From: Macrostomum lignano
Lineage: Eukaryota
Length of the DNA: 64,000 bases
Assembly (NCBI GenBank): GCA_002269645.1
Contig: NIVC01001680.1
Span: 186,001-250,000 of the forward strand
Reading direction: 5' to 3'
Shown: positions 8,177-59,745 of the stretch, piece by piece
How the letters are laid out: the number at the start of each line of letters is the position of its first letter
Position numbering within the stretch: the stretch's first letter is position 1
Notes under the pieces: model-generated
The model's input: the letters and a program-made list of their open reading frames with translations, nothing else
Databases searched by the model: none
Told to the model about the DNA's origin: nothing
Position numbers and translations under genes: made by a program

Positions 8177-15088
<6,912 letters not shown>

Positions 15089-15569
15089 CGCCTGCCTGTC
15101 TGTCTGCCTCCCAGTCCTCAAGGCAATTTGTCAATTTGCTATTTTGCCAAACTTTCTGCTCGATTTAAAATATACTCGTACTTTGCACGATATGTTTTGT
15201 CTTTGTACGTTTTGCTTTCCGGTGGCAGAGCCTTCGGTCGCTCGGCTGCCTGCACATCCGTGTACAGATCTGCAGTACTTGCTATATGCTGCATAAATAG
15301 CCTAGCTCCGGCTTGTCTCCTAATTATATAATTAAGTTCATATTTTTGCTGCTTGTCTCAACAAGTCACTTATCTTGTTTTTGAGACACAATAAAGGCAT
15401 CGGTAATGCATGAATATTGTGCATAAAGTCGCACCAATATGCCGTTACAAGTAAATACAAGTATTATTTTGCTGATTTCACCTGTTGTTTTGTTGACTTT
15501 AATATCTCATTTATCATAATTCTGCTGAAGTGCGATTCCCATCCCAGGGTCGGGTCACCTCGGGTGCTG

Positions 15570-16708
15570 AACTGAGATCCCATCCCAGTGTTAACTAATG
15601 AAGTGAGATCCCATCCCAGTGTTAACTAATGAAGTGAGATCCCATCCCAGTGTTAACTAATGAAGTGAGATCCCATCCCAGTGTTAACTAATGAAGTGAG
15701 ATCCCATCCCAGTGTTAACTAATGAAGTGAGATCCCATCCCAGTGTTAACTAATTAAGTGAGATCCCATCCCCAGTGTTAACTAATGAAGTGAGATCCCA
15801 TCCCCAGTGTTAACTAATGAAGTGAGATCCCATCCCCAATGTTAACTAATGAAGTGAGATCCCATCCCAGTGTTAACTAAGGAAGTGAGGTCCCATCCCC
15901 AGTGTTAACTAATGAAGTGAGGTCCCATCCCCAGTGTTAACTAATGAAGTGAGATCCCATCCCAGTGTTAACTAATGAAGTGAGATCCCATCCCTAGTGT
16001 TAACTAATTAAGTGAGATCACATCCCCAGTATTAAATAGTGAAGTGAGATCACATCCCCAGTGTTAACTAATGAAGTGAGATCCCATCCCCAGTGTTAAC
16101 TAATGAAGTGAGATCCCATCCCCATGTTAACTAATTAAGTGAGATCCCATCCCCAGTGTTAACTAATTAAGTGAGATCCCATCCCTAGTGTTAACTAATT
16201 AAGTGAGATCACATCCCCAGTGTTAACTAATGAAGTGAGATCCCATCCCTAGTGTTAACTAATTAAGTGAGATCACATCCCTAGTGTTAACTAATGAAGT
16301 GAGATCCCATCCCTAGTGTTAACTAATTAAGTGAGATCCCATCCCCAGTATTAAATAGTGAAGTGAGATCACATCCCCAGTGTTAACTAATGAAGTGAGA
16401 TCCCATCCCCAGTGTTAACTAATCAAGTGAGATCCCATCTCCAGTGTTAACTAATCAAGTGAGATCCCATCCCCAGTGTTAACTAATCAAGTGAGATCCC
16501 ATCCCCAGTGTTAACTAATCAAGTGAGATCCCATCCCCAGTGTTAACTAATCAAGTGAGATCCCATCTCCAGTGTTAACTAATGAAGTGAGATCCCATCT
16601 CCAGTGTTAACTAATGAAGTGAGATCCCATCCCTAGTGTTAACTAATGAAGTGAGATCCCATCCCCAGTGTTAACTAATGAAGTGAGATCCCATCTCCAG
16701 TGTTAACT
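15570..16708. repeat. 31-32-bp minisatellite
   Basis: GAAGTGAGATCCCATCCCCAGTGTTAACTAAT tandem copies. Confidence 0.95.
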
Positions 16709-18584
16709 GACTAAACGAGATCTCCGCTTCACAATCAGCTGACTCAAAATGCGTGTTTCAGCTGACAGCCGGGTAAAATGCCAGTCGCCATCTCTCGCTC
16801 TCTGACTCTCAAACTGCGGATCTGTATAGGTGAGTTGGTGTGCATTTATAAGTTTTCATTTCTATTTGGTGTTTAGTCTATGAATAAATGATGTTTATTG
16901 TTTTTACTAGTCGCTATGGTTACCCGTGTGACGACTTACTTGCCCTCTCTGATTTTGTCTGTCAAAAGTGCAGCACTAGTGGCACAAAGACCTGGAATTT
17001 GATTCATTACTGACGTATCAAACTGATTGCATTGACAGGGCCACCCATGGAGTTCGCAGCTGGCCTGCACATACGGATAGCGAATATCGGTGAGTCAAGT
17101 TTGATTGCTCTGTTGCACCTGCGAGTGTTTTTGTGCATTTAAAGTACATGATGCCTATCGTTTACCCGTCGCTATGGCAACCCCAAGTGACGACCAACTT
17201 GCCCTCTCTGACTCAATATATTTTATTAAAATACAAATAAAATACTCTTATATACTACTTGTCTTATTAGTCTGTCCGCTTACATTAACCTTCCAGGCTC
17301 GGTCTTGTAGATCTGTAGCAGTGCTGCAGGAGTTGAACACTTTATAGCTGTAAGTTTCAGCAATGCCTTTTTATGACAAATTTTCCTGAGCTCTGCGATT
17401 TTTATGATGCCTACCGTTTACCCGTCGCTATGGCAACCCCAAGTGACGACCAACTTGCCCTCTCTGATTTTTTGTCCGTTAATAACTGGTCAAGTCTTCA
17501 TTATACGTTTGTTTAAAGTGCATCTGTATTTGATTATCAGCTTCTAATGCACTCTTTCAGAGCCAGTCGTGGGCAGAGGTGGTCGCTCATAACCCACGGA
17601 TTTGTCTGAGTCCCAGTGCGAGCTCAGCTGCTCGATTTTATCCACTATCAATGATGCCTATCGTTTACCCATCGCTATGGCAACCCCAAGTGACGATTAA
17701 CTTGCCCTCTCTGATTTCTTGCTAAAAAATCAAAAGTGAAAGGCTGTGTGATGTACAAAACTGTATTCTTGATTATCTGCTTCCCATTCACCCTTTCAGA
17801 GCCAGCCGTGGGCAGAGGCGGTCGCTCATAACCCACGGATTTTTCTGTGAGTCCCAGTGCGAGCTCAGCTGCTCGATTTTATCCACTATCAATGATGCCT
17901 ATCGTTTACCCGTCGCTATGGCAACCCCAAGTGACGATTAACTTGCCCTCTCTGATTAGAGCTTTATCTCATTGTGTGCATTTGTCTCTTGTGCTGTTGG
18001 AGCTGATTGAAGCAAATTCTTTTATTTCAGGAAGAAAGTCTGCTCTGAGCTCGGTTTGGTGTGAGCAAATTGGCATTGCTGCTCAGGTGAGTCTAATCAG
18101 AATTACTTTACTATAGAATGCTGACTTTTATGCGCAAATGATGTCTATCGTTTACCCGTCGCTATGGCAACCCCAGATGACGATTAACTTGCCCTCTCTG
18201 ATTAGAGCTTCATCTCATTGTGTGCATTTGTCTCTCTTGTGCTGTTGGAGCTGATTGAAGCAAATTCTTTTATTTCAGGAAGAAAGTCTGCTCTGAGCTC
18301 TGTCTGGTGTGAGCAAATTGGCATTGCTGCTCAGGTGAGTCTAATCAGAATTACTTTACTATAGAATGCTGACTTTTATGCGCAAATGATGCCTATCGTT
18401 TACCCGTCGCTATGGCAACCCCAAGTGACGACTAACTTGCCCTCTCTGATTCAATAATTTTCAATAAAATTGTTTAATAGTTTTTTCGTTTCCTATTAAA
18501 TTGTACATTTAGAGCGATGAAGTTTAAGTTTCTATTATCACTTATTATCTCGCCCGAAAATTAGGGTCGGTAATTCAGAGATTA

Positions 18585-19155
18585 AAGGTCGGGAATGCAG
18601 GGATCCAAGGTCGGGAATGCAGGGATCCAAGGTTAAGGAATGCAGGGATCCAAGGTCGGGAATGCAGGGATCCAAGGTCGGGAATGCAGGGATCCAAGGT
18701 TAAGGGATGCAGGGATCCAAGGTTAAGGAATGCAGGGATCCAAGGTCGGGAATGCAGGGATCCAAGGTTAAGGGATGCAGGGATCCAAGGTTAAGGAATG
18801 CAGGGATCCAAGGTCGGGAATGCAGGGATCCAAGGTTAAGGAATGCAGGGATCCAAGGTTAAGGAATGCAGGGATCCAAGGTTAAGGAATGCAGGTATCC
18901 AAGGTTAAGGAATGCAGGGATCCAAGGTTAAGGAATGCAGGTATCCAAGGTTAAGGAATGCAGGGATCCAAGGTTAAGGAATGCAGGGATCCAAGGTTAA
19001 GGAATGCAGAGATCCAAGGTTAAGGAATGCAGAGATCCAAGGTTAAGGAATGCAGGGATCCAAGGTTAAGGAATGCAGGGATCCAAGGTTAAGGAATGCA
19101 GGGATCCAAGGTTAAGGAATGCATGGATCCAATGTCGGGAATGCAGGGATCCAAG
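18585..19155. repeat. 22-23-bp minisatellite in snoRNA-host intron
   Basis: GGAATGCAGGGATCCAAGGTTAA / ..GGTCG; the same array recurs at 20008-20810. Confidence 0.95.
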
Positions 19156-20007
19156 ACCGTGACTGGACATGATTAAACCCACTTACCGGTGATTTCAGCC
19201 CCAGTTGGCTGTGCTCGCAGGTGTTCAGAATCGCCACCTTCAGGACTGCCACAGCCCGCATTTCCGCACCGAAACTCTTGCAGGTGTGTTTGAGCTTTGC
19301 GTTTCTGTGCAACGACCTGACAATGATGCCTATCGTTTACCCGTCGCTATGGCAACCCCAAGTGACGATTAACTTGCCCTCTCTGATTTCTTGCTAAAAA
19401 ATCAAAAGTGAAAGGCTGTGTGATGTACAAAACTGCATTATTGATTATCTGCTTCCCATTCACCCTTTCAGAGCCAGCCGTGGGCAGAGGCGGTCGCTCA
19501 TAACCCACGGATTTTTCTGTGAGTCCCAGTGCGAGCTCAGCTGCTCGATTTTATCCACTATCAATGATGCCTATCGTTTACCCGTCGCTATGGCAACCCC
19601 AAGTGACGATTAACTTGCCCTCTCTGATTAGAGCTTTATCTCATTGTGTGCATTTGTCTCTTGTGCTGTTGGAGCTGATTGAAGCAAATTCTTTTATTTC
19701 AGGAAGAAAGTCTGCTCTGAGCTCTGTCTGGTGTGAGCAAATTGGCATTGCTGCTCAGGTGAGTCTAATCAGAATTACTTTACTATAGAATGCTGACTTT
19801 TATGCGCAAATGATGCCTATCGTTTACCCGTCGCTATGGCAACCCCAAGTGACGACTAACTTGCCCTCTCTGATTCAATAATTTTCAATAAAATTGTTTA
19901 ATAGTTTTTTCGTTTCCTATTAAATTGTACATTTAGAACGATGAATTTTTAGTTTCTATTATCACTTATTATCTCGCCCGAAAATTAGGGTCGGTAATTC
20001 AGAGATT

Positions 20008-20810
20008 AAAGGTCGGGAATGCAGGGATCCAAGGTCGGGAATGCAGGGATCCAAGGTTAAGGGATGCAGGGATCCAATGTTAAGGAATGCAGGGATCCAA
20101 GGTCGGGAATGCAGGGATCCAAGGTTAAGGAATGCAGGGATCCAAGGTTAAGGAATGCAGGGATCCAAGGTTAAGGAATGCAGGGATGCAAGGTTAAGGA
20201 ATGCAGGGATCCAAGGTCGGGAATGCAGGGATCCAAGGTTAAGGAATGCAGGGATCCAAGGTTAAGGAATGCAGGGATCCAAGGTTAAGGAATGCAGGGA
20301 TCCAAGGTTAAGGAATGCAGGGATCCAAGGTTAAGGAATGCAGGGATCCAAGGTTAAGGAATGCAGAGATCCAAGGTCGGGAATGCAGGGATCCAAGGTT
20401 AAGGAATGCAGGGATCCAAGGTTAAGGAATGCAGGTATCCAAGGTTAAGGAATGCAGGGATCCAAGGTTAAGGAATGCAGGGATCCAAGGTTAAGGAATG
20501 CAGAGATCCAAGGTTAAGGAATGCAGGGATCCAAGGTTAAGGAATGCAGAGATCCAAGGTTAAGGAATGCAGGGATCCAAGGTTAAGGAATGCAGAGATC
20601 CAAGGTTAAGGAATGCAGGGATCCAAGGTTAAGGAATGCAGGGATCCAAGGTTAAGGAATGCAGGGATCCAAGGTTAAGGAATGCAGAGATCCAAGGTTA
20701 AGGAATGCAGGGATCCAAGGTTAAGGAATGCAGGGATCCAAGGTTAAGGAATGCAGGGATCCAAGGTTAAGGAATGCATGGATCCAATGTCGGGAATGCA
20801 GGGATCCAAG
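20008..20810. repeat. 22-23-bp minisatellite (second copy, within segmental duplication)
   Basis: Same unit and flanks as 18585-19155. Confidence 0.95.
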
Positions 20811-22074
20811 ACCGTGACTGGACATGATTAAACCCACTTACCGGTGATTTCAGCCCCAGTTGGCTGTGCTCGCAGGTGTTCAGAATCGCCACCTTCAGGA
20901 CTGCCACAGCCCGCATTTCCGCACCGAAACTCTTGCAGGTGTGTTTGAGCTTTGCGTTTCTGTGCAACGACCTGACAATGATGTCTATCGTTTACCCGTC
21001 GCTATGGCAACCCCAAGTGACGATTAACTTGCCCTCTCTGATTTCTTGCTAAAAAATCAAAAGTGAAAGGCTGTGTGATGTACAAAACTGTATTCTTGAT
21101 TATCTGCTTCCCATTCACCCTTTCAGAGCCAGCCGTGGGCAGAGGCGGTCGCTCATAACCCACGGATTTTTCTGTGAGTCCCAGTGCGAGCTCAGCTGCT
21201 CGATTTTATCCACTATCAATGATGCCTATCGTTTACCCGTCGCTATGGCAACCCCAGATGACGATTAACTTGCCCTCTCTGATTAGAGCTTCATCTCATT
21301 GTGTGCATTTGTCTCTCTTGTGCTGTTGGAGCTGATTGAAGCAAATTCTTTTATTTCAGGAAGAAAGTCTGCTCTGAGCTCGGTCTGGTGTGAGCAAATT
21401 GGCATTGCTGCTCAGGTGAGTCTAATCAGAATTACTTTACTATAGAATGCTGACTTTTATGCGCAAATGATGTCTATCGTTTACCCGTCGCTATGGCAAC
21501 CCCAAGTGACGACCAACTTGCCCTCTCTGATTTTTTTTACCCTTTAGTCTTAGAAATTTTTGTTGCAGTTACTTTCGATGCAGCCCTCTTACTGAATTCA
21601 AATTAAATTGATAAAAAAATTACGCATTTCAGCTCCTGGCCGGTCACGTGTAACCTGGAGATGCTGGAATTGGTATTCGCCTCACTTTTTGTAACTGTAT
21701 CGCCTAATCGATCAGCTTGCAGAGTCCAACTTGTACTTGCATGCGTCTTTAAAATATACTCACGCTTTATACCGTTTGGATGAGCAAAGTTTTAACCTTA
21801 AATGTCGAAAAATTCCGTTGTCTTAATTGAGTTTTATTACTTGCGAATAGGTGAGACAGGATAAGCGCTGTGGGATGTGCAATGGGCATGAACACATTAA
21901 CTGTGGTTTAACTTTGTTCGCAGGTAACAAACATGAAAGCAGGATGCGCTGAAGCAAGTGCGATTAAGATCCAAAAGCGTTAGAGGGAATGTACAATGGG
22001 TGTTTCAAAAGTAACGAGAACTTTGTTATAACTTTTGATTGGATAAACGTATGAACCTGAAATTGTCACCCAAC

Positions 22075-22720
22075 AATTTTACACATACGAACAACTAATA
22101 GCTTTTTTAAGCCTTATATAGCTGCACGCGAACGCAACTGTGTAATCGTACATGAAAAATCATGCCTCAAAATTTTAAATTACGATTTTTGTCTATGGCA
22201 AAAGTAACCAAGTTTGAACGCGTTCATCAAGTCAAAAATCCGGCAAAATTTTTCATTTCAGCAATTTCAGCGAGCTCTACAAAGCTGCCATTCATCTGGA
22301 TACCCTTCTCGCAGCGATGCACCAGTTTTGTTAATTTCCTCCTCCCAAAAACTCGACATTTTCGGACCATCCATAGTCTCAGTCGGAAAAAAATTGAGCC
22401 ACTTTCACAGAATATTCTGTGGCCACATCAGTCAGAAATTGCAACTTTAACCAGGAATGCTATGCAGCTAAAAACTGCAAGATTATTCCCAAGCAACTTT
22501 GCCCATAGAAAGCAGAAAGAGTGGGCCCTATGAGAAGTAGCCAAATTTAGCAGCAGAAGTTTAAAAGCCTTCAAATTTTAAACTTTTGATTCTTTTTGCC
22601 ATAGACAAAAATCGTAATCTTCAATCTCGAGGCATGGACTTTCATTTACGATTACACAGTTGCGTGCAGCTATATAAGGCTTAAAATATAAAGCTATTAG
22701 TTGTTGTGTGTAAAATTGTA
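22075..22720. mobile_element. Fold-back/MITE-like element with ~140-bp imperfect inverted arms
   Basis: Arm 22075-22215 (AACAACTAATAGC..GCAACTGTGTAATCGTA..TTACGATTTTTGTCTATGGCAAAA) recurs inverted at 22575-22720. Confidence 0.6.
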
Positions 22721-31976: not shown

Positions 31977-34131
31977 TCACGGCTGCGACAAGCCGGCGCC
32001 GATGACGCACTTGCCGTTGGCGGCGCAGGCGAATCCGCGGGGGCAGCAGTGGGAGCCGCCGGAACAACAAACGCCCTAAAGGTTGAGAAACGATTATAAT
32101 ACAATATCAGATACCAGTAGTTTTGAAACATTACTCTATATAAGCTACCAAGGAACTTACGTCAGAATGGCTGCAACACTTGGGACTGCCGGAGTCAGTA
32201 ATGCAGCAAGTAGACTTGCTGCCGCAGTTAAGGCCCGCAGCGCAAGCCACCAAGCGCCTCTGTGCACCGAACATAGAAAAGTGAGCTGAGCCAGCAGACT
32301 GTGATGGATAATCAGCTGAGCGAGCAGGCTCAGTAGTGGCCACTTGGTCAACCTCCGACACAGGAGCCATGCACTGGTACGTCTTTGGGTCGCACACAAG
32401 GCCGTACTTGCAGCACAGCACTGAGCCGGAGTAGAACGTGCAACAGCTGGACAACTTAGCACGGCTAGCAATGGAACCCGACTTGGAGCAGGTACCAGCA
32501 GACACATCGCACTTGTAGCCGTTGGGACAGCAGTGGACTCCGTCACTGCAGCATGTGGCCTTCTCCAATGGACAGCAGCCATACTGACCTGACTGAAGCT
32601 TGCAGCACGTCGATCCGTCTGGGCACTGGCTTTGACCGTCGGGGCACACTACGGCGTCGGTCTTGGTCTTGGTCTTGGTGAGAGCGTGGACAATGCCTCC
32701 TTTGGAGCAGGTACCAGCAGACACATCGCACTTGTAGCCGTTGGGGCAGCAGTGGACTCCGTCACTGCAGCATGTGGCCTTCTCCAATGGACAGCAGCCA
32801 TACTGACCTGACTGAAGCTTGCAGCACGTCGATCCGTCTGGGCACTGGCTCTGACCGTCGGGGCACACTACGGCGTCGGTCTTGGTCTTGGTCTTGGTGA
32901 GAGCGTGGACAATGCCTCCTTTGGAGCAGGTACCAGCAGACACATCGCACTTGTAGCCATTGGGACAACAGTGGACTCCGTCACTGCAGCATGTGGCCTT
33001 CTCCAATGGACAGCAGCCATACTGACCTGACTGAAGCTTGCAGCACGTCGATCCGTCTGGGCACTGGCTCTGACCGTCGGGGCACACTACGGCGTCGGTC
33101 TTGGTCTTGGTCTTGGTGAGAGCGTGGACAATGCCTCCTTTGGAGCAGGTACCAGCAGACACATCGCACTTGTAGCCATTGGGACAACAGTGGACTCCGT
33201 CCCTGCAGCATGTGGCCTTCTCCAATGGACAGCAGCCATACTGACCTGACTGAAGCTTGCAGCACGTCGATCCGTCTGGGCACTGGCTCTGACCGTCGGG
33301 GCACACTACGGCGTCGGTCTTGGTCTTGGTCTTGGTGAGAGCGTGGACAATGCCTCCTTTGGAGCAGGTACCAGCAGACACATCGCACTTGTAGCCATTG
33401 GGACAACAGTGGACTCCGTCACTGCAGCATGTGGCCTTCTCCAATGGACAGCAGCCATACTGACCTGACTGAAGCTTGCAGCACGTCGATCCGTCTGGGC
33501 ACTGGCTCTGACCGTCGGGGCACACTACGGCGTCGGTCTTGGTCTTGGTCTTGGTGAGAGCGTGGACAATGCCTCCTTTGGAGCAGGTACCAGCAGACAC
33601 ATCGCACTTGTAGCCATTGGGACAACAGTGGACTCCGTCCCTGCAGCATGTGGCCTTCTCCAATGGACAGCAGCCATACTGACCTGACTGAAGCTTGCAG
33701 CACGTCGATCCGTCTGGGCACTGACTCTGACTGTCGGGGCACACTACGGCGTTGACCTCTTTGTCTTGCTTAACTATGCAAGTTCCATCTTTAATATTGC
33801 ATTGGTGTCCGAATGGGCAGCAAGTTAATTTATCAACACAGCAGGTTCCATTTTTGTATGGACAACAGCCTTCTTGCCCGGTGCTTAGAGAACACTTGCT
33901 CTCTCCGTTAGAACATCTATTACTGTGTGAAGTCGATGACTTCAGTGTTGGTAGTTGCAATGGTTGAGATCTTTTGATGGCAGGGATCTTTTTAAAGATC
34001 GGGATCGTGTCAGGCAATTCGTCATCAAAAAGAGGTCGTCGAATTGGTTTGTAGAGAAGGTCATGGGAAAGAACTTCGCTAGTAGCAAGAACACTTGCAA
34101 AAAGAAGTGAAAGAAGAAGACGACCGGGCAT
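31977..34131 (-). CDS. GRN: Progranulin / granulin precursor
   Basis: Signal peptide MPGRLLLSLLFASVLA; six 73-aa units CPDGQSQCPDGSTCC..GCCP..TCC..HCCP..C..C. Exon 32161-34131 plus last exon 31977-32075 (GVCCSGGSHCCPRGFAC). Confidence 0.92.
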
Positions 34132-35259
34132 GGTAGCCCTTAAAATCGAATTTTCAAAAAAGGGATCAAATAAAAATAAAAATACGAGTAGCTTGTGCAG
34201 ACGACAGGCGACTTCTTTTTTGTGTCTTTTAACGCACAATTACAAATAAGATTTTATCATGTAGATACATCTTGAATTCAACCTAAACACCCATTTTGAA
34301 TTAACGCAATTAGAAACTGGGATTATTAACAAAATTTTGTTGTCAGCAACCTAAGTTTATTTTTAGTAAAATTTGAAAGTTTTTACGCATGATTTTTTTA
34401 ATTTATAATTTTTTCATTAAAGACAGCACTAGATAAACATGTATTTCTGGCTATGATATTATTGTCGTTAGCAGCATGATGCCACATAGTGGTTAGGTGG
34501 AGGTTTGTATCAATTTCAATTAGGTATTTTAATTCTGCGTCATAAAACTTTATCCATTTTAGCTATACTTCTATACTAATTCTACGTCCTAATAAACGCT
34601 AAGAAGTAAGAATCAGTTGAAAAATGAGACAGTAATTTAAATAACTGTACTGTTCTGCAGGATAGGGTCCAATGTTCTGACTTATGCCTACTAAAGCCAA
34701 ACCCAAACCAAAAGCTAAAGCTTAACGCCTTGATTTATGTTTACAAAGTTTTTTGTTTTTTTAAATAATTATTATTTTGACATGTCATAATTTATAATTA
34801 GTAAGATAAAATTCAGAATTTAAGACACTTGTAATTGTAAATGCAGAGAGGCGTTATTTTATTTAAAACAGCTAGCAGAGCAGAGAGAAGTAACAAATCT
34901 AAGCCTAAGGTGGTGGTGGTGGTTTGCTTGTATGATATGGCATATGGTATGGTAGGCCACTAGGCCTATAGAATATAGAATAGACACTTATTTGGACTAT
35001 CAATATGTGAATGTGCAGAAATTTCCTTTCAAAAATTCCAGAAAAATTTATCATCATAGCCTATAGCCTAGGCCTACATATACCTGTACTGTAGGCCTAG
35101 CTGTAGGCATTCCTTTAATCTAAATATACTAAATCTCTAAGGTTTGTATGCTTGAATGTCCATAACACTCTAGAGCTTGCAATTTAACACTAGGTCTATA
35201 ATAGGCCCTATACTTATCTTGACCTAGGGCCTAGTCATTGAAATTAGTTGGACCTAGGC

Positions 35260-43593: not shown

Positions 43594-44487
<894 letters not shown>

Positions 44488-44495
44488 AACAAAAA

Positions 44496-44906
44496 ATGAC
44501 ACACGTTACACATGTGCAAAATATAAATGAGTATCAGGTAGGAGATCCAATTGAATACCGAGGTGAGGGACTTTTTGATTTGGTTGGAACAGCAGCAAAT
44601 TTTGTTAAAGACAATATGGGGCTTATAGGACAAGCTGGCTCTGCAGCAGGCTCTATAACAAATGCTGTAAAAGGAGGAATTGAAGCAGCTAGAGCGGCAG
44701 AAGAACTAAAGAAATTGAGAGATTTTAACGATACCCTCTCACAGATAAAAGCAATAAAAGATTTGAAATTAGCACAGGAAGCAACCCAAGCCGCACAACC
44801 AACAGAAACCCCCACGAAAAGCGCACCAATAAGTAATAAAGATATTCAGGATTTTAATAAAATGTTAAATACTATTAAAGGTGGAAAAGGATTAAAGAAA
44901 TTTTAA
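44496..44906 (+). CDS. Small putative virion core/membrane-active protein
   Basis: 136 aa with GEGLFDLV amphipathic segment and GGKG motif; function inferred only. Confidence 0.6.
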   Translation: MTHVTHVQNINEYQVGDPIEYRGEGLFDLVGTAANFVKDNMGLIGQAGSAAGSITNAVKGGIEAARAAEELKKLRDFNDTLSQIKAIKDLKLAQEATQAAQPTETPTKSAPISNKDIQDFNKMLNTIKGGKGLKKF

Positions 44907-44916
44907 CAATATAAAA

Positions 44917-45912
44917 ATGGGCTCAGTTAATGATGATGAAAACCGGTTATATTTTATAGGAGAAATTGTAGATACCTTAAATCTTGATGATAATAAGCAA
45001 ACCCACACAATGTTAAAAAGATTGGATCGATTAGGTAAAAAGTTTGACTACGACATCGATACATTTAAACTCGCAGCAAAATATGCACAAGAAGGAAGGC
45101 CAATATCCTTTAAGAATCGCGGCAGAAATTATAGGTTAACCGACTCCGATGTGAAATTTTTAATGGAGACTCACACTAAAAAGGACGGCGGATTACTACC
45201 CATTCTACCGCTTCTTTTAGGACTTGGCGCAGCTGGAGCAGTCGGTTTAGCCGGAAAAAGAATTCATGATAATGTAAAACAGCTAGGAGAGTTAAGAGCG
45301 AAACAGGGGGGAATCTTGCCCCTTGCAGCTTTGCTCCCAATAATTTTTGCAGGAATTGGAGCAGCTGGAGGAGTTGCTGGCGGAGCAGCTGGAATTGCAA
45401 AAGCAGTAAATGACAAAAAAGCTGCGGACGAAAAAGCTAAAAGAGAGGCCGAATTTCAAAGACAGCAAATAACGCAGGACGCACAATTTAAACAGAAACT
45501 TATTGATACCATTAATAGTAGTTCAGCAACAGCAGAGCAAAAAAGAAATGCAGAAGCTAGGTTATCAGCTGGAAAAGGTTTACTCTTGCAAGGATCAAAT
45601 CATGGCAATGGTTTACTTTTACAAGGAACAACCCAAGGAAGCGGAGTTGTCGCAGATAAATTACATGAATTTGGTCAAACTTTAGAAAAAACGGGTGAGA
45701 AAGCTAAAGGATTTTTTGACAATATTGGGGCTAATTTTAGGCCAGCAGTTCAGAAGATTTTTACTAAATTAGGAAAAGATTTTAACATAATTGAAAAGCA
45801 TGATGGAAGCGGATTATATCTCGAAATGAGACCAAAAGCAGGTTCAGGAATTTTCTTAAATTCAAACGTTATGGGCAATGGATTGCTGTTACCAAAAGCA
45901 GATCTCGAATAG
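44917..45912 (+). CDS. Core protein with adenovirus pX(mu)-like GG-[IL]LP hydrophobic motifs and GxG-L repeats
   Basis: KDGGLLPILPLLLGLG, KQGGILPLAALLPIIFAGIGA; GKGLLL, GNGLLL, GSGLYL, GSGIFL, GNGLLL. Confidence 0.65.
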   Translation: MGSVNDDENRLYFIGEIVDTLNLDDNKQTHTMLKRLDRLGKKFDYDIDTFKLAAKYAQEGRPISFKNRGRNYRLTDSDVKFLMETHTKKDGGLLPILPLLLGLGAAGAVGLAGKRIHDNVKQLGELRAKQGGILPLAALLPIIFAGIGAAGGVAGGAAGIAKAVNDKKAADEKAKREAEFQRQQITQDAQFKQKLIDTINSSSATAEQKRNAEARLSAGKGLLLQGSNHGNGLLLQGTTQGSGVVADKLHEFGQTLEKTGEKAKGFFDNIGANFRPAVQKIFTKLGKDFNIIEKHDGSGLYLEMRPKAGSGIFLNSNVMGNGLLLPKADLE

Positions 45913-45995
45913 GCTCCTGGGGGAGGGTCTGGACACCAAAAACGCAAAATTAAAAAATCAATAATTCAAACATTATATAAATTATATTCTATAAA

Positions 45996-48900
45996 ATGGA
46001 ACAAAGATTGACCCCAGATCAGATTCGACAACTTCTTGCAAATGAGCGCCAACAGTTCAATCGATTACAAAGACAGATTGAACAAATTGAACAGCGCCAA
46101 AGACAACAACGCCGCCAAAGAGCAAGAGAAAGACAGAGAGAAAGGCAGAGAGAAAGAGAAATACAAGACCAACAAATAAATGCATTAGCAAATAATATAA
46201 GGGCAGAATATGAAATGAAGCGATTAATAGAAAAGGCTGAATATGAAAAAAGAATAGCAGAATTAGAAAAAAACCAAAAGAAACCCACACGTCGGAAACC
46301 TCGGAATAAATCGGATGAAAAACCATTAGATGAGTTTATTAGGGTTTATCGATTTGAACCAATGCAGAATGTCCTAGATTTTATTGAAACCCAGCTTTCA
46401 AACGGATATGCTGTTGAAATTACTAATGCGAGGGTACAATATTTTTATAATAAAACCGGAGATGATCGTGAAGAGATTAATCAATACTTAGCAACATTTT
46501 ATAATATAAGCCAATTTCAAGCTTGGTTTAAGCATTTGGTAGAAAATTACGACATGAATTTAAGTGTGTTTTCTGGAAGACTTAAAATGACACCAAACGA
46601 AATTACACTTAAACACGAAAGGTCAAAGCAGGGTATGGGAACAAATGTCATGTGTGAAATTGTAGAGTATAAAGATGAGTACTGTTACATACCTAGTGAT
46701 GGAAATTGTTTCTACAAGTGTGTTCAGTTTATTTATGGTGATAAAGCCCCATCCAAAGACGAATATGGTGCTTGGTTGTTCGACTCAAGAACCCAAAGAG
46801 GTTTAATGACAAATTCAAGAATTGGAAGATTCAACGAATATTTTAATCTTAATATAGGGCTGTACAACACCAAAAATCGTGGCATTGAACCAAAGTTTCA
46901 AAGAGGGATTCACCACGATTGGTTATTAATAAATTATTTCCACACACCCGATTACCACATTGGGCATTATTGTCTTATATCAAATAAACAACGAGGAATC
47001 GCCCTCGAACGGATAAAAGACAATTATAAAGTTGTATATAAAAACCCAACGCTCGAAAATGTTAAGGAGCTAAAAATGTTCAACACACCCACAAACCCCA
47101 ATAAATCAAACGTATATATATTTGATTTTGAAACATATTTAAATTATAATCAACAAGCATGTCCGTATGCGGTTGGTCTTTTAAACTATAACGACTTTTC
47201 TAATAAGTGTAATGAAACCCCAGAGACAATAAAGAAACTAACTAAGATCTTGATATCAGATCGCGGTTGTGATTTTCAAACAGATGGAGATAAGGTTGAT
47301 CGTACCGAAGGTTCGCGGCCTAAGACCGATTGTGTTAGAAAAATGTTTAAATACCTTGGTACAGTTAGGTCAAAAAAGATTGTTTTGATCGCGCATAACT
47401 CATCCCGCTTTGATTCATACATACCACTATTTTGTAATATAAAACCAATTAAAATTCTCAAAACCCCAAGAGGAATATTATCAATAACTTTTGTAAACGA
47501 TTACGCGTCAAAAGAGGTTAGTGCATTTATAAACAAAGATAAGAAGAAGAATCATAAGGATTCGAAACAAACCATTACGATGCTTTGTTCATATCAACAC
47601 GCATCAATGAGTTTAAAAAAGTTTTGCTCATCAATGACAATTAGAGAGGATTTGCGAAAGACCTCAATGGTTCACGACATTACCGAACACGACTATTTAG
47701 AGCGCATGGACGAATGGTATGAATATTTACAATTTGATCTTATTTCTTTATGCGCCTGTATTCATAAGTATAATGAAATAGCATATGAAATTGGAGGAAT
47801 GACAATGTTCGATACTCTTACCTGTTCAAGTTTAACATTAAAATGTTGGTTTAAAGATTTTGTTAGAGTTGAAGACAAAATGAAACAATATCTAAAGACA
47901 GAAGAAAAAACTAATTACATTAAAAAAGTTGAAGAAATAATATCTCCGTTGAAAATAGAGGATTATTTTGACTTAAGCAAACTTGAAAAAGCAAAATACC
48001 AAACACTATTAAGAAAAGAATTTTCAGTTCACTCTCATACCAATCCTTATATACGAAGGTTTATGCGGGACGCAGTCAAAGGAGGCAGGGTATTTGCACT
48101 AATAAATAAATATGAAAGCGACTGTTTTCAAACAATTGTAGACGTTGTAAAAGCCCATTTAAAAACACCAACAAGCGACCCATGCGAGGTTATATCAACT
48201 TATCTCAAAAGCGATATGGAAGAAAAAAAGAAAATCGCAATTAAATTAAAAAACAATTGGGTACCGTATCAGATTGTTTAATGAATTTTGATGGAGTTTC
48301 GTTGTACCCATCTGCCATGTCTGATAAGGATAGTGAATATCCAAGAGCAGAAACAGCAAGAGTTTTTGATATAAGCGAGGAAAAAGATTTCTTGGCACAA
48401 TTTAATTCACAAACCTTTCGACCAAAAACAGCGGTTTTAAAGATTATGTATGAGAATCCTAACACCGTTTTTCTTCAACATCTCCCATCGAAAGATAAAG
48501 AGAAATTTTATAATCCGGAAACAAAAGCAAACGAAACAAAAACATTAAATAGGTTTAGAAACGGAAAAGTAATTGACACCTTATGTTCCGTAGATATACA
48601 AGAAATTGTAAGAATGGGTGGAAAAATATTAAAGATATATAGTGGAATTGTATATGAAAAAAATTACGATTTCTCTCCGTTTCAGAATTATATTACAAAT
48701 CTTTTTGAAATGAGAAAAGTATTTAAAAAAGAAAATAACGAGGCAGGTTCTGAATTGGTAAAAACACTATTAAATTCATTATATGGCAAAACAGTTCAAA
48801 GAGACATTACTTTCACAACACATCTCTGGAATTTGCAAACATTAAAAACCGAATACGATGACACAATCAAATCATATGAGAAAATATGTGACGATTTATA

Positions 48901-49615
48901 TTATGTTGAAAAAAATAAAGACACGCAAGAATATGTAGATGAGGAAGAGGAAAGTCCTATAACAAGCCTTTGTCCAGCACAATTAGGAATATTTATCTTA
49001 GCTCATTCAAGAAGGATCATGAATAATTTTATTACCTCTATAGAGGGCTCAAAGACTCCAGAAATTTATTACGGCGATACAGATTCGTTATATATACATA
49101 AAAAACATTGGGACACATTAAATAAAAACGGGCATGTTGGAAATAACTTAAGTCAAGGAAAAAATGATTATGGAGAGGGTGGAATTATATTCGGTTATTT
49201 TATCGCTCCTAAAATTAAATATTGTCTTTTATTGAAAGACGATTTTATTATGGAAGAGAAAAAAACATTTAAAGGATGTGCAAACGATAAGATTAATTTT
49301 GCATCGTTTAAAACTTTATATGATGGACAGTCAATAAAAGTAAATAATAATGCTCCGTGGAAACGATCATTTGAAGGTGGTATAACAATTCCTCAAAGCG
49401 GATCAACAATATCAAAAACATATACCTCTACGATAAACACATTTAAAAGAGAAAAACCGGATAAAAACGGAGTTATGAAACCATTCTTTAAAAACTATTT
49501 TGATGACAAACCACAGCATGAACATTCAATTGAATATTATAACAGTTTACTATTTGACGTTGACTATAATTGTTTTGAGTTCGATATTGATGAATTAGCA
49601 CTTGAAAAAAACTAA
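45996..49615 (+). CDS. polB: Protein-primed DNA polymerase B (one frameshift at ~48250)
   Basis: FDFET (ExoI), AHNSSRFD (ExoII), YLQFD (ExoIII), KGGR, DGVSLYPSAM, KTLLNSLYGK, YGDTDS. Confidence 0.95.
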
Positions 49616-49861
49616 AGCATGTAATTGTTTAAGCATAATATCCATTTCGATTTCATATAATATTGAAGGCCAATTTTCCTCGCAGTCGTCAGGGTAACTT
49701 AAACAATCCTTTATTTTTTTCCTAAGTTTTTTTATTTTTCTAACCAATCTATCTATTTCAATTTCAATTACTATTTCAGCATAATTAATTGCAGATTTAA
49801 TAAAACGTTTTCTTTTATCCATTTTCATATCGGATGGGAAACATATCGTCCCCATACTCAT
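49595..49861 (-). CDS. Hypothetical protein
   Basis: 88-aa ORF packed against the polB end; no motif recognised. Confidence 0.45.
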   Translation of the reverse strand: MSMGTICFPSDMKMDKRKRFIKSAINYAEIVIEIEIDRLVRKIKKLRKKIKDCLSYPDDCEENWPSILYEIEMDIMLKQLHALVFFKC

Positions 49862-49953
49862 GATATTTCTGAGATATAATTATATTTATTTTTTTATTAA
49901 TATCATTAAGTTCACGCTCTTTAGTGATAAGGATTTTTATTGTCTCCATTTTC

Positions 49954-50301
49954 TTATAAAAAATTTAAACTTATTCGGGGGTCATCCTCCCAAACAGCCG
50001 CCAATTTTACAGTCCTATCACTCTTTTTATTATTTGTTTGTTTTAGTTTAAATTGCAATCCACCCTCGTTGCAGTATTTCATAACAAACGCTTTAGGTTT
50101 ATTAATAACTAAAACAGGAAAATTTTTAACATCATCTCCGCTTAGACATAAAATTTTTTGCCCATCTAATTGTAAAAATATTGATTGAAGCCCAATAAAT
50201 TTAACCTGTCTCAAACATATAATATTATATTCTTTATTCTCCAACATATTGGGTGTGAGATAATTAATCACATTAGAATCGGTTTTGAACCAGCTCTCCA
50301 T
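49954..50301 (-). CDS. Hypothetical protein (probable start MESWFK)
   Basis: Normal composition within the packed viral gene array. Confidence 0.5.
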   Translation of the reverse strand: MESWFKTDSNVINYLTPNMLENKEYNIICLRQVKFIGLQSIFLQLDGQKILCLSGDDVKNFPVLVINKPKAFVMKYCNEGGLQFKLKQTNNKKSDRTVKLAAVWEDDPRISLNFL

Positions 50302-50328
50302 TTTTAATCTAAAAAAATAACAAAAAAA

Positions 50329-50841
50329 ATGAAAGACATTTATGTTTGTAATAAATGTAATGTGACTATGCACAGAGGGCAAACAGCAAACGGAGATATA
50401 TATCATATGTGTTATTCATGTTCTAAAATATATCAATTTGAAAAAACAAAAAAGATTGAAAACTCATATTACTATTTTAAAAACACAATTTTAAGAAATC
50501 TTACAAGAGACATTTCTGATCCAATTTTAATTCCCGGAAATAATGTTTATTTATATAATAACTTTTTCCATTTAAATAAAGGAAAGGGATTAAGTTCGAA
50601 AGACTCCGAAAGGATTTTAATTTTAGTTGGATATTATTTCAATTTTCTTATTCGAGAGAATACAAAGTTTATAAGGATAGGTAACATACCTAACGAAATG
50701 TTACTGAAAAAGTCATTGGAATTTTTATGTATTGATAAAAAATTTAAACCTAGGATCAGAAGAGAGTTACCACTTTGGGAAGAATATATAACATATGCAT
50801 TAAATAAATTAAACAACATTAAGTTCTACCGCACTTCCTGA
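50329..50841 (+). CDS. Zn-ribbon-containing hypothetical protein
   Basis: CNKC..CYSC near the N-terminus. Confidence 0.55.
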   Translation: MKDIYVCNKCNVTMHRGQTANGDIYHMCYSCSKIYQFEKTKKIENSYYYFKNTILRNLTRDISDPILIPGNNVYLYNNFFHLNKGKGLSSKDSERILILVGYYFNFLIRENTKFIRIGNIPNEMLLKKSLEFLCIDKKFKPRIRRELPLWEEYITYALNKLNNIKFYRTS

Positions 50842-51465
50842 CCGTGGGCTTTGTGCCCCAGTAGCAATAGTTTCAGGTTCGTAAATACCTAATGTTTCTA
50901 TAGGTGGAGCTTTGGGTTTGTCCAAACGTAATTCTTTTAATTCCATATCGGTAAAAGTTTCAACATCTAAAATTCTATTTCTATCTTTTAAATATTTTTC
51001 ATATAATTCAACCGCGGTTGATAATTCATGAATCGTTATCTCTCCGTCATCCAATATTTTTTGCACATATAAATATAATTGATTTTTATATTGTTTTGCA
51101 ACATCTCTTAAAGATTTATATTTTTCCTTTCTTTTTTTAAGATATAATTTAATTGCTAAAAGTATTGATAAGTTCCTGATCAATTCAAAACCTGATATTG
51201 AGCCAATTGAAATACCTAAAAATAATTGAGATAAATTAAGAGTTGGAATAGATTGTAAAATACCTAAAACGATTACACATAACATTGATAAGCTTCCAAA
51301 TCCAATATTGAAAAAGTCCATATTTCTTATATGGTTTGAAACTCTTCTTACTTTTTTAGCATATAAATCATAATCATAGTTAATACGATCAACATTACTT
51401 AACATCTGACCTTTACGTTGGTTGAACCGGTCGCGTTCCCATTTATCTGCTTCAGATACCGACAT
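50809..51465 (-). CDS. Two-TM-helix protein of the type common in Polintons
   Basis: Two hydrophobic segments followed by KEKYKSLRDVA..QKILDDGEITIHEL (cf. SKALxDxxISxxEF pattern). Confidence 0.55.
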   Translation of the reverse strand: MSVSEADKWERDRFNQRKGQMLSNVDRINYDYDLYAKKVRRVSNHIRNMDFFNIGFGSLSMLCVIVLGILQSIPTLNLSQLFLGISIGSISGFELIRNLSILLAIKLYLKKRKEKYKSLRDVAKQYKNQLYLYVQKILDDGEITIHELSTAVELYEKYLKDRNRILDVETFTDMELKELRLDKPKAPPIETLGIYEPETIATGAQSPRSGSAVELNVV

Positions 51466-51794
51466 TCTCGTCTATTTTTAATAGCACCAAAATGAATTCC
51501 CCGCGCTCTTTGGGGATTTGTCCCGAGCTCAATAGGTATTGTATTGGAGTGATTCTTTCTTTTTTCTCCCATTTAAATCCTATTTTCCAAAACTCTTGAA
51601 GTATAATATGATTTTTTAATAACTTAATTAATTCTTGAAGCTTCTTATTATCCTGAACATTTACAGTACTAAATAAAAATTTGGTATGAGATTTGAATGT
51701 TTTTATATTTGATTCTTGTTTAGGAATAGGAATAATAACATTATTTTGCCGCATCGATGGAGTTCTACTAAAAGCCATTTTATATAGAAATATT

Positions 51795-53838: not shown

Positions 53839-53848
53839 TTTTTACTGT

Positions 53849-54310
53849 CTATTTTATAGAGTCTAAAATCGTGCCATCGGCACGCATGCTTTGCATGATA
53901 CTAAATCTTCGGGTTTCCTTCGAGTTATTAATTTTATATAAAAAATACAACGCCGCTTGCCCGCAATAACTTTTATCAAATGTTTGAAATTGTTCGTGAT
54001 GATCTCCACATAAACGATTTTTAGTATGATTAAATTTGTCTTTTATTTCCTGTAACGGAGGAAGCGCGTATGAATCAAAAAAATAAACAAGTTTTGGTTT
54101 TGAATAAACTGCTGACCAATGAACACCGTTTTCTTTTGTTGTTTCAATATTAACAATGAAAGATCCATATTGTGGTAAGTCTTTGATCTCATCTCGCATA
54201 ACACATCTGAATGGTTTTATTTTTAACTGCCTCGCCCAATTTGTTAATTCGATATTGCTTGTTGTGTCCGTTCCATATCTTTGTTTAAAATCATCCCACG
54301 TCATGGTCAT
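53849..54310 (-). CDS. Adenain-like (C5) cysteine maturation protease
   Basis: NGVHWSAV (His), FFDSY (Asp), QTFDKSYCG (Gln/Cys). Confidence 0.92.
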   Translation of the reverse strand: MTMTWDDFKQRYGTDTTSNIELTNWARQLKIKPFRCVMRDEIKDLPQYGSFIVNIETTKENGVHWSAVYSKPKLVYFFDSYALPPLQEIKDKFNHTKNRLCGDHHEQFQTFDKSYCGQAALYFLYKINNSKETRRFSIMQSMRADGTILDSIK

Positions 54311-54531
54311 TTTATGTTCCTGAAAAACTCTTGGTTTTAGTTAGTTTCGTAGGTGTGGGTTTTAACAATTCCTTTCTTATTTTATCAGCTTGTAACTGCC
54401 TTAATTTTGCTAGTTCTAGTTCGTAATTATCTTCAGCTTTTTTAACTTTTTCTGATTGTTTTTTTATTAAATTATTATTATTATCGTGCTTTGCACGCGA
54501 ACATGTTGTTCGATTACCCATTTTTACAGTA

Positions 54532-59720: not shown

Positions 59721-59745
59721 ATCAACATGGAAATAATTGTGTTGA

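What the first reader, a model, noticed from the sequence alone, without database searches (positions are those of the whole stretch)
16888..21530. Thirteen copies of one C/D snoRNA, one per intron of a non-coding host gene
Seen in sequence: a 64-nt unit with C, C' and D boxes sits in each intron between tiny non-coding exons. ACTTGCCCTC lies just upstream of CTGA. By the D+5 rule it targets the middle G of 18S GGAGGGCAAG, equivalent to human G601, which SNORD103 guides with the same antisense element (recalled, not searched). Single-family amplification on this scale is unusual for an rRNA-methylation guide and resembles the tandem SNORD115/116-type organisation.
Basis: partly seen in the sequence, partly recalled or inferred. 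Interest (0 to 1): 0.8.

Follow-up and report, generated by a model that had tools for sequence, protein, structure and literature searches.

The report
Flatworm snoRNA array in non-coding host
A flatworm (Macrostomum lignano) locus carries 13 copies of one small nucleolar RNA, one in each intron of an apparently non-coding gene; by sequence it guides methylation of a conserved 18S rRNA base, which is a clean but fairly ordinary, unannotated example of a known gene layout.

Summary
Thirteen 64-65-nt units (16888-21530, + strand) each carry AUGAUG(C/U), (G/A)UGACGA and ACUUGCCCUCU+CUGA. Each unit lies between a consensus splice donor and acceptor. The 13 short exons between them have stops in all frames.

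The window is Macrostomum lignano contig NIVC01001680.1, and no CDS is annotated over the array. The D guide pairs over 11 bp with the universal 18S segment GGAGGGCAAGU. The fifth-nucleotide rule selects the G equivalent to human 18S-G601, the SNORD103 site.

- Ten of the 13 copies come from a recent, roughly 1.65-kb higher-order repeat (96-98% identity).
- The 5' half of copies 2-13 is complementary (10 Watson-Crick + 2 G-U pairs) to 28S GCGGGUAAACGG, in the same register as vertebrate SNORD87 (28S-G3723). However, the box that follows (CGCU) is a poor D' box.

No Rfam family matches the units. Repeating one rRNA guide through the introns of one host gene has precedents in chicken, frog, zebrafish and fly, so the "unusual" claim is overstated.

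Expression, splicing and methylation were not testable here. Verdict: a new member of a known kind, of modest interest.

The parts
16888..16952 (+). snoRNA copy 1 (65 nt), diverged: 79% identical to the others. It keeps the C box, GUCGCUAUGG, the C' box, the D guide and the D box, but its 5' guide region has decayed.
17148..17211 (+). snoRNA copy 2 (64 nt) in intron 2, with unique flanks
17404..17467 (+). snoRNA copy 3 (64 nt) in intron 3. A U->C change turns the G-U pair at the 5' edge of the 28S-complementary stretch into a G-C pair.
17651..17714 (+). snoRNA copy 4, the first unit of higher-order repeat 1. It has a G->A change at unit position 21.
17892..17955 (+). snoRNA copy 5, the consensus sequence. 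C box 17892-17898; 28S-complementary stretch 17902-17913; CGCU 17914-17917; C' box 17931-17937; D guide 17941-17951; D box 17952-17955.
18138..18201 (+). snoRNA copy 6 (C box AUGAUGU; C' box AUGACGA)
18386..18449 (+). snoRNA copy 7, in the 864-nt intron 7 that also holds a 23-bp minisatellite
19323..19386 (+). snoRNA copy 8, the first unit of higher-order repeat 2
19564..19627 (+). snoRNA copy 9
19810..19873 (+). snoRNA copy 10, in the 1095-nt intron 10 that holds a minisatellite
20978..21041 (+). snoRNA copy 11, the first unit of the partial higher-order repeat 3
21219..21282 (+). snoRNA copy 12
21467..21530 (+). snoRNA copy 13, in the last predicted intron
16762..16829 (+). Predicted first exon; its start is unknown. 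A possible acceptor, ..GTTTCAG|, ends at 16761. A pyrimidine-rich tract CTCTCGCTCTCTGACTCTC lies at 16792-16810. The donor is TAG|GTGAGT at 16830.
   Evidence: inferred from sequence only
17039..21415 (+). Twelve predicted internal micro-exons: 17039-17089, 17297-17349, 17561-17603, 17800-17846, 18031-18086, 18279-18334, 19199-19283, 19472-19518, 19703-19758, 20854-20938, 21127-21173, 21360-21415. They range from 43 to 85 nt and fall into three repeated exon types plus unique ones.
21633..21850 (+). Predicted last exon or further exon. The 3' end and poly(A) signal were not identified, and another GT donor at 21851 means the gene may continue.
18592..19155 (+). 23-bp minisatellite (GGAATGCAGGGATCCAAGGTTAA, ~25 copies) inside intron 7
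20016..20810 (+). The same 23-bp minisatellite (~35 copies) inside intron 10
17649..21532 (+). Higher-order tandem repeat of ~1655 bp, with units starting at 17649, 19321 and 20976 (the last is partial), 96-98% identical. It accounts for copies 4-13.

Best explanation
The locus is a tandem array of box C/D snoRNA genes. Each copy sits in its own short spliceosomal intron of a probably non-coding RNA polymerase II host gene in Macrostomum lignano.

Inferred mechanism, by analogy with established intronic snoRNA biogenesis:
- The host pre-RNA is spliced.
- Snu13, Nop56, Nop58 and fibrillarin assemble on the C/D motif of each intronic unit. Most units sit about 75-100 nt upstream of the 3' splice site.
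- The debranched intron is trimmed by exonucleases to a ~64-70-nt snoRNA.
- The spliced exon RNA is a by-product.

Target: the 11 nt before box D (ACUUGCCCUCU) pair with 18S GGAGGGCAAGU. This places the middle G of GGG, equivalent to human 18S-G601 (the SNORD103 site), at the fifth paired position from box D, where fibrillarin would add a 2'-O-methyl group.

A second activity is possible (I put it at about 40%). The 5' half, UCGUUUACCCGU followed by CGCU, would guide methylation of the 28S G before UAAACGG, equivalent to human 28S-G3723 (the SNORD87 site).

The copy number most likely arose by unequal crossing-over in a repeat-prone region, through a ~1.65-kb higher-order repeat. It need not be adaptive.

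Shown here: sequence anatomy, copy number, sharp conservation boundaries, complementarities, splice-site consensus, absence of an ORF.
Inferred: transcription, splicing, snoRNP assembly, methylation.
For: - Repetition: 13 exact guide+D-box matches against 0.1 expected.
- Boxes: the C box, the C' box and the guide plus D box are invariant in all 13 copies, including copy 1, which is otherwise 21% diverged. Variation falls in the 3-nt spacer just 5' of the guide, the last C-box position and the R position of C'.
- Boundaries: unit identity is 94-100% while the flanks of different module types are at the random level. This points to selection, or to concerted evolution limited to the unit. It also argues against shared upstream promoters.
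- 18S target: the 11-bp duplex (-19.7 kcal/mol) is with a segment found exactly in at least 120 metagenomic eukaryotic contigs. It was among the longest (10-nt) Watson-Crick matches in an unbiased scan of five rDNA loci.
- Specificity: across both strands of the whole 64-kb window, only these 13 sites combine a D-box-adjacent conserved-rRNA 10-mer with an upstream C box. There was one other hit, and it lacked a C box.
- Splice sites: 12 of 13 donors are consensus, all acceptors are Py-tract/CAG, and the snoRNA-to-acceptor distance is 75-102 nt in 11 of 13 introns. This fits the ~70-nt optimum cited in PMC1821038.
- Coding potential: the spliced exons have 12-15 stops per frame and a longest ORF of 40 aa. 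No CDS is annotated between window 15088 and 24958. The upstream DZF gene has its own AATAAA.
- Site assignments: SNORD103 -> 18S-G601; SNORD87 -> 28S-G3723, a methylated position.
- D' candidate: 10 Watson-Crick + 2 G-U pairs (-23.2 kcal/mol) with the conserved 28S segment GCGGGUAAACGG. The register (ACCC + 2 nt + box) is the same as in human SNORD87, deduced from the published antisense oligonucleotide. The box spacing is near-symmetric: 15 nt from C to CGCU and 14 nt from C' to D. A conserved chance match of this length arose in 15 of 2000 shuffles.
Against: - No expression, splicing, snoRNP-association or methylation data could be obtained. Exact-protein look-ups in public assemblies found no transcript contig.
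- No Rfam C/D family matches the units.
- There is no conserved terminal stem. The flanks give 0-2 bp next to the boxes.
- The seventh C-box position is C or U, not A.
- The M. lignano rRNA itself was not available, so target presence rests on universal conservation.
- Copies 4-13 are so recent (96-98% repeat identity) that their conservation says little. There are only about five independent lineages.
- Copy number in a long-read assembly of a tandem repeat may be inaccurate.
- Against the D' guide: CGCU matches CUGA at one position of four; copy 1 has lost the complementarity (-6.2 kcal/mol); part of the stretch is sequestered in a predicted internal hairpin; and an overlapping second 28S complementarity (unit 20-30) has no explanation.
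Confidence: 0.78

Rival explanations
1. The micro-exons are not a separate non-coding gene. They are alternative 3'-UTR exons, or a downstream trans-spliced cistron, of the neighbouring DZF-domain protein gene, so the snoRNAs are hosted by a coding gene.
For: The DZF gene ends at 15088 on the same strand, only ~1.7 kb upstream. A good acceptor (GTTTCAG|) ends at 16761, just before the first exon. There is a direct precedent: the fly DmSnR60 a-d copies were first assigned to a non-coding host (dUhg6) and later shown to lie in 3'-UTR introns of the coding gene mfl (PMC1821038).
Against: A canonical AATAAA lies ~300 nt after the DZF stop codon. A 1.1-kb 32-bp satellite separates the two genes. 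Thirteen introns downstream of a stop codon would make the mRNA a strong target for nonsense-mediated decay.
Confidence: 0.1
2. The array is a recently amplified, largely or wholly inactive repeat: snoRNA pseudogenes carried along by a local tandem duplication. The working copy is elsewhere in the genome.
For: Ten of the 13 copies belong to a repeat that is 96-98% identical. The region is full of satellites. There is no terminal stem, and no expression data are available.
Against: Older copies (1, 2, 3) have unrelated flanks yet keep the boxes and an intact D guide. Every copy keeps a consensus intron frame and the typical distance to the acceptor. No copy has a disabling change in the C box, the D box or the D guide.
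Confidence: 0.07
3. Each unit is an independently transcribed snoRNA gene with its own promoter, as in nematodes, plants or trypanosomes. The apparent splice sites are incidental.
For: Independent snoRNA genes and tandem snoRNA arrays exist in several non-vertebrate lineages (general knowledge).
Against: Upstream 60-nt flanks of different module types share no more than random similarity, so there is no common promoter element. A consensus donor lies 39-58 nt upstream of every unit and a Py-tract/CAG acceptor lies downstream of every unit. By chance GT[AG]AGT is expected in about 3% of 60-nt windows.
Confidence: 0.03
4. The array is a SNORD115/116-like orphan or regulatory cluster that acts on mRNAs or on splicing rather than on rRNA.
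For: The layout is the same: tandem modules of a non-coding exon plus an intron holding a snoRNA.
Against: The D guide is perfectly complementary, in the correct register, to a universally conserved rRNA site that is methylated in vertebrates. Orphan clusters are defined by the lack of such a target.
Confidence: 0.02

Closest known systems
SNORD103 (U103 / HBII-251; SNORD85 is an isoform), the vertebrate guide for 18S-Gm601
   Same: The predicted target nucleotide is the same, and the duplex is of similar length (11 nt here; 11 nt in chicken GGgCD15). It is also multi-copy within one host gene in chicken (three PUM1 introns).
   Different: There was no match to any Rfam model. The chicken homologue uses the 5' (D') element, whereas this unit uses the 3' (D) element. 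The vertebrate host is the coding gene PUM1; here the host is an apparently non-coding gene. There is no alignable sequence outside the guide.
SNORD87 (HBII-276), the vertebrate guide for 28S-Gm3723, hosted by a non-coding gene
   Same: The 5' half of copies 2-13 carries CGUUUACCC in the same register before the following box as human SNORD87 (..GCCGUUUACCCAG|CUGA, deduced from the antisense oligonucleotide in PMC10911272). The guide is also a 5' element in chicken. Chicken has three copies in introns 1-3 of a non-coding EST, and Xenopus and zebrafish have four genes each.
   Different: The box after the guide is CGCU, not CUGA. There is no Rfam match. Copy 1 lacks the guide. Here the same RNA would also carry the SNORD103-type guide.
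Non-coding multi-snoRNA host genes (UHG, GAS5 and gas5-like genes; Drosophila Uhg genes)
   Same: Short exons under 100 nt, no meaningful ORF, one snoRNA per intron, and tandem intragenic ('cis') duplication as the growth mechanism.
   Different: Those genes host several different snoRNA families, whereas this one hosts a single family 13 times. A 5'TOP start is only suggested here, by a pyrimidine tract.
SNORD115 / SNORD116 / SNORD113-114 imprinted tandem clusters (and rat Bsr/RBII-36)
   Same: A repeated module of non-coding exon(s) plus an intron holding one C/D snoRNA, amplified in tandem.
   Different: Those clusters are orphans with no rRNA target, are specific to eutherian mammals, are imprinted and have 30-50 copies. 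This unit has a canonical rRNA guide, and only about three to four repeat generations are visible.
Drosophila DmSnR60 a-d in the mfl gene
   Same: [quoted passage not shown]
   Different: There are four copies rather than 13. They have canonical D' boxes. The host proved to be a coding gene.

Membership tests
Box C/D snoRNA (class) | C box RUGAUGA near the 5' end | tested here: met
   AUGAUGC (9 copies) or AUGAUGU (4 copies), a 6/7 match in all 13 copies
Box C/D snoRNA (class) | D box CUGA near the 3' end | tested here: met
   CUGA is invariant in 13/13 copies
Box C/D snoRNA (class) | Antisense element of at least 10 nt ending next to box D, with a plausible target at the fifth paired position | tested here: met
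   An 11-bp duplex (10 Watson-Crick + 1 G-U) with 18S GGAGGGCAAGU that abuts CUGA. The fifth position is the middle G.
Box C/D snoRNA (class) | Terminal 5'/3' stem that closes the C/D kink-turn | tested here: inconclusive
   The flanks offer only 0-2 bp next to the boxes and no conserved external stem
Box C/D snoRNA (class) | Internal C' and D' boxes | tested here: inconclusive
   C' is (G/A)UGACGA, a 5/6 match to the UGAUGA core, and is conserved. No CUGA-like D' box exists; the best-placed candidate is CGCU. An internal hairpin is predicted but shows no covariation.
Box C/D snoRNA (class) | Accumulates as a stable 60-100-nt RNA bound by fibrillarin/Nop56/Nop58/Snu13, and the target is 2'-O-methylated | not testable with these tools
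   No RNA or methylation data for M. lignano were reachable. The literature search found no Macrostomum snoRNA study.
Intronic snoRNA in a non-coding host gene (UHG/GAS5 type) | One snoRNA per intron, about 70-100 nt upstream of the 3' splice site | tested here: met
   13 units in 13 predicted introns; 75-102 nt to the acceptor in 11 of 13
Intronic snoRNA in a non-coding host gene (UHG/GAS5 type) | The spliced exons lack a conserved ORF | tested here: met
   12-15 stops per frame, longest ATG ORF 40 aa. No CDS is annotated in the NCBI record. Conservation across species was not testable.
Intronic snoRNA in a non-coding host gene (UHG/GAS5 type) | 5'-terminal oligopyrimidine (TOP) start, and a transcript that is spliced and polyadenylated | not testable with these tools
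   A pyrimidine-rich tract at 16792-16810 is only suggestive. The transcription start and poly(A) site are unknown.
SNORD103 family (Rfam) | Match to the family covariance model | tested here: not met
   No hit to any snoRNA family on the units at the gathering threshold, or at E<=10 on 16700-21700
SNORD103 family (Rfam) | Guides the 18S position equivalent to human G601 | tested here: met
   Predicted from the guide register. The numbering was checked against a human 18S sequence recalled from memory.
SNORD103 family (Rfam) | The guide lies in the 5' (D') element, as in the chicken homologue GGgCD15 | tested here: not met
   Here the guide precedes box D. Chicken GGgCD15 is listed as '11 nt (5')'.
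SNORD87 family | 5' antisense element complementary to 28S ..GGGUAAACGG.. that places the G before UAAACGG five positions from a D' box | tested here: inconclusive
   The complementarity and register are present in copies 2-13, but the box is CGCU and copy 1 lacks the guide. There is no Rfam hit.
SNORD115/116-type tandem cluster | A tandemly repeated module of exon plus snoRNA-bearing intron | tested here: met
   A higher-order repeat of three to four such modules, present about three times
SNORD115/116-type tandem cluster | Orphan guide: no canonical rRNA or snRNA target | tested here: not met
   Canonical 18S complementarity in the correct register

The most novel reading that the evidence does not exclude
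The unit is a true double guide that joins, in one 64-nt RNA, the specificities of two separate vertebrate families: SNORD87 (28S-Gm3723, through an atypical CGCU D' box) and SNORD103 (18S-Gm601). The chicken snoRNA table lists no yeast or plant counterpart for either site. If the double guide is real, both methylations would date back at least to the bilaterian ancestor. The invariant GUCGCUAUGG segment might in addition provide accessory pairing to a third conserved 28S segment.
Probability: 0.35. Interest if true: 0.4.

Novelty: new member of a known kind. Interest (0 to 1): 0.3.

Why it matters
My literature search found no study of Macrostomum snoRNAs, and this locus is unannotated. The finding gives a concrete, testable rRNA-methylation guide in a regeneration model organism. 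It predicts that the human 18S-G601 site, and possibly 28S-G3723, is methylated in Platyhelminthes, which would push the age of these sites beyond vertebrates. It also shows how a snoRNA host gene grows by module duplication, at an unusually readable stage: old diverged copies next to a fresh higher-order repeat. It does not change the understanding of snoRNA biology.

Tried and rejected
1. Rfam, at gathering thresholds and at permissive E-values, gave no family for the units. It gave only chance-level sR4 and isrC hits, plus an unrelated group I intron elsewhere in the window.

2. I looked for paralogous or allelic M. lignano loci to compare.
- A protein search with the neighbouring DZF exons returned no M. 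lignano entry.
- Exact-protein look-ups returned only the window's own contig or nothing.
- As a result, no cross-locus or cross-species comparison was possible.

3. I looked for transcript evidence through small ORFs of the host RNA. The ORF in the last exon was not on record.

5. The internal hairpin is compatible with all copies but shows no covariation, so it is not established.

6. Retroposition was rejected as the origin of the copies. No A-tails or target-site duplications flank the units, and all lie in the same intron frame.

7. An antisense rRNA pseudogene fragment was rejected, because there are three separate 10-12-nt complementarities rather than one long one.

8. The planarian RiboMeth-seq paper lists too few sites, in its own numbering, to confirm or exclude the two targets. 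The supplements of the Drosophila methylation map are not held.

9. The original U103 paper could not be retrieved.

Full report
**Where the window comes from.** A granulin ORF at 32131-34239 (-) is 91% identical to a Macrostomum lignano protein. Two loci fetched from NCBI assembly GCA_002269645.1, contig NIVC01001680.1, cover part of the window. The first aligns at 100% identity to window 21977-44131. The second spans window 14958-35245 by its record coordinates, which match the first locus. Window coordinate = record coordinate - 186,000. The sequence is therefore nuclear DNA of a free-living flatworm. That annotation has no CDS between a DZF-domain gene ending at 15088 and a 95-aa ORF at 24958.

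**The observation.**
- ACTTGCCCTCTCTGA occurs 13 times, all on the + strand, against 0.1 expected.
- Each occurrence ends a 64-nt unit (65 nt in copy 1) that begins with ATGATG.
- The consensus is AUGAUGC-CUAUCGUUUACCCGU-CGCU-AUGGCAACCCCAA-GUGACGA-UUA-ACUUGCCCUCU-CUGA.
- In the 13-way alignment, ATGATG, TCGCTATGG, TGACGA and ACTTGCCCTCTCTGA never vary.
- The variable positions are the last C-box base (C/U), the R position of the C' box (G/A), two single changes in the 5' half, and above all the 3-nt spacer just 5' of the guide (UUA/CUA/CCA/CUU). This is the pattern expected if the D guide and the boxes are constrained and the spacer is free.
- Copies 2-13 are 94-100% identical. Their 60-nt flanks, when they belong to different module types, are as unlike as random sequence (0.40-0.59 against a null of 0.48 +/- 0.05). 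The conserved block begins and ends sharply at the boxes.
- Copy 1 is only 79% identical. It has lost the 5' half and the loop but keeps every box and the D guide intact.
- No further copy exists in the window.

**Array structure.** A self-comparison shows a ~1655-bp higher-order repeat starting at 17649, 19321 and 20976, 96-98% identical. Each repeat holds three or four modules of micro-exon plus snoRNA-bearing intron, and one intron swollen by a 23-bp minisatellite. Copies 4-13 therefore reflect a very recent local amplification. Only about five lineages are old (copies 1, 2, 3 and the module types inside the repeat). Copy number in such an assembly should be treated with some caution.

**Host gene.**
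- Every unit lies 39-58 nt downstream of a GT donor: GTGAGT nine times, GTAAGT once, GTGTGT twice, and one weak GTCTGAGT.
- Every unit lies upstream of a pyrimidine-tract/CAG acceptor. Eleven of the 13 introns are 184-217 nt long.
- The snoRNA end is 75-102 nt from the acceptor in 11 of 13 introns. This is close to the ~70-nt position reported as optimal for intronic C/D snoRNAs, and a conserved position relative to the 3' splice site was also noted in a fly example (PMC1821038).
- The 12 internal exons are 43-85 nt long. Joined together they have 12-15 stops per frame and no ATG ORF longer than 40 codons.
- The first exon holds a pyrimidine-rich tract that could be a TOP-like start, but the start site is unknown. 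It is preceded by a possible acceptor.
- The upstream DZF gene has its own AATAAA about 300 nt after its stop codon.
- I could not find the 3' end of the host gene.
- All of this is inference from sequence. Attempts to reach transcript contigs failed.

**D guide and its target.** The exact 37-mer GGAGGGCAAGTCTGGTGCCAGCAGCCGCGGTAATTCC was found in at least 120 metagenomic eukaryotic contigs. In an unbiased scan of the whole unit against five full rDNA loci, ACUUGCCCUC/GAGGGCAAGU was among the longest (10-nt) Watson-Crick matches in all five. With a G-U pair next to box D it extends to 11 bp (-19.7 kcal/mol). Counting from box D, the fifth paired base is the middle G of GGG. SNORD103 is listed as the guide of human 18S-G601 (PMC8881200). 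A human 18S sequence that I wrote from memory places that G at 601, with A at 590 and U at 627, which are known methylated positions (this rests on my recall). A scan of both strands of the whole window gives a specificity control: looking for a conserved-rRNA 10-mer abutting CTGA with an upstream C box found the 13 units, plus one hit without a C box.

Unit positions 11-22 (UCGUUUACCCGU) pair with 28S GCGGGUAAACGG by 10 Watson-Crick and 2 G-U pairs (-23.2 kcal/mol). This 28S segment is conserved in every rDNA locus long enough to include it.
- SNORD87 guides human 28S-G3723, a methylated position (PMC3349704; PMC10911272).
- The published anti-SNORD87 oligonucleotide, CAGCUGGGTAAACGGCAAAA, implies a guide ..GCCGUUUACCCAG|CUGA. 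That is ACCC, then two nucleotides, then the box.
- The flatworm unit has ACCC, two nucleotides, then CGCU. If CGCU acts as the D' box, the same G would be methylated.
- In chicken, G3233 (SNORD87) lies 16 nt before A3249 (SNORD46 site), which matches the sequence geometry.
- The spacing is near-symmetric: 15 nt between C and CGCU, and 14 nt between C' and D.
- A shuffled internal region reaches a conserved match of at least 10 nt in 15 of 2000 trials.
- Copy 3 carries a U->C change that turns the terminal G-U pair into a G-C pair.

Against this reading, CGCU matches CUGA at one position only, copy 1 has lost the complementarity (-6.2 kcal/mol), and the 3' end of the stretch lies in a predicted 10-bp internal hairpin. 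I rate the double-guide reading at roughly 35-40%.

**An unexplained third match.** Unit positions 20-30 (CGUCGCUAUGG), invariant even in copy 1, are complementary to a conserved 28S segment (U/C)CAUAGCGACG. No box follows it, and I know of no methylation there. The same bases form the 5' strand of the predicted hairpin, which is compatible with all copies but shows no covariation. This could be chance, a hairpin constraint or accessory pairing.

**Comparison with known families.**
- No Rfam family matches the units, even at E<=10. Membership of SNORD103 or SNORD87 is therefore not shown, only functional analogy.
- The chicken U103 homologue uses its 5' element for this site, whereas this unit uses the 3' element.
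- The layout of one rRNA guide repeated through the introns of one gene has many precedents: chicken U103 x3 in PUM1, chicken SNORD87 x3 in introns 1-3 of a non-coding EST, SNORD87 x4 in Xenopus and zebrafish, and fly DmSnR60 x4.
- Intragenic 'cis-duplication' is described as a main route to snoRNA paralogues.
- The SNORD115/116 analogy holds for the module layout. It fails on the defining orphan status.
- Thirteen copies of one guide is more than in any of the precedents I could cite here, but most are a fresh triplication in a satellite-rich region.

**Verdict.** The locus is a real, well-formed array of box C/D snoRNA genes in an apparently non-coding host. Its predicted target is the flatworm equivalent of human 18S-G601, and it may carry a second, SNORD87-like guide. 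It is unannotated, and my literature search found no Macrostomum snoRNA study. In kind, however, it is ordinary.

Noticed in passing
window 44136-61495: A 17.4-kb AT-rich Maverick/Polinton-type element bounded by ~350-bp terminal inverted repeats (44136-44485 and 61175-61495, 92-95% complementary). Its protein-primed DNA polymerase B is split over two overlapping ORFs (45996-48281 and 48257-49615). An rve-integrase-like motif, seen by eye only, lies near 59850-60060. The element looks partly decayed.
   Followed up: partly
window 59126-59429 (+): An Rfam-significant group I intron (66.6 bits, E 1e-14) interrupts a phospholipase-A2-like ORF inside the Maverick element. Joining ..ACAGGT|CCGGGG.. 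restores the peptide ..HLPSMNFTGPGTRLD... A later YHDLAY motif is in another frame. Group I introns are reported in protist Polinton-like viruses (PMC12220804). One literature search turned up no animal Maverick with such an intron.
   Followed up: partly
window 15568-16708: A 32-bp satellite (TGAAGTGAGATCCCATCCCCAGTGTTAACTAA, ~36 copies, 94% matches) lies directly upstream of the predicted first exon of the snoRNA host gene.
   Followed up: no
window 17800-17846 and its repeats (19472-19518, 21127-21173): The repeated 'A-type' micro-exon contains a 7-bp inverted repeat (CCGTGGG...CCCACGG). It also holds a stretch, GGTCGCTCATAACCC, that resembles the snoRNA segment CGTCGCTATGGCAACCCC. This may be chance or the remnant of an exonised copy (by eye).
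   Followed up: no
window ~22100-22690: A short element with long terminal inverted repeats (MITE-like) lies just downstream of the array (by eye).
   Followed up: no
window 12489-15088 (+) and 32131-34239 (-): The neighbouring genes are a DZF-domain (ILF/ZFR-like) gene, annotated as an 819-aa product ending at 15088, and a multi-repeat granulin gene (seven Granulin domains). The coding and intronic parts of the region carry many minisatellites.
   Followed up: partly
window 18006-18053, 18254-18301, 19678-19725, 21335-21382 (+): Weak, sub-threshold Rfam matches to the archaeal C/D RNA sR4 (14.5-18.5 bits, E 0.7-8.5) span the acceptor of the 'B-type' exon (ATTGAAGC...CTGAGC). They are most likely chance.
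   Followed up: no
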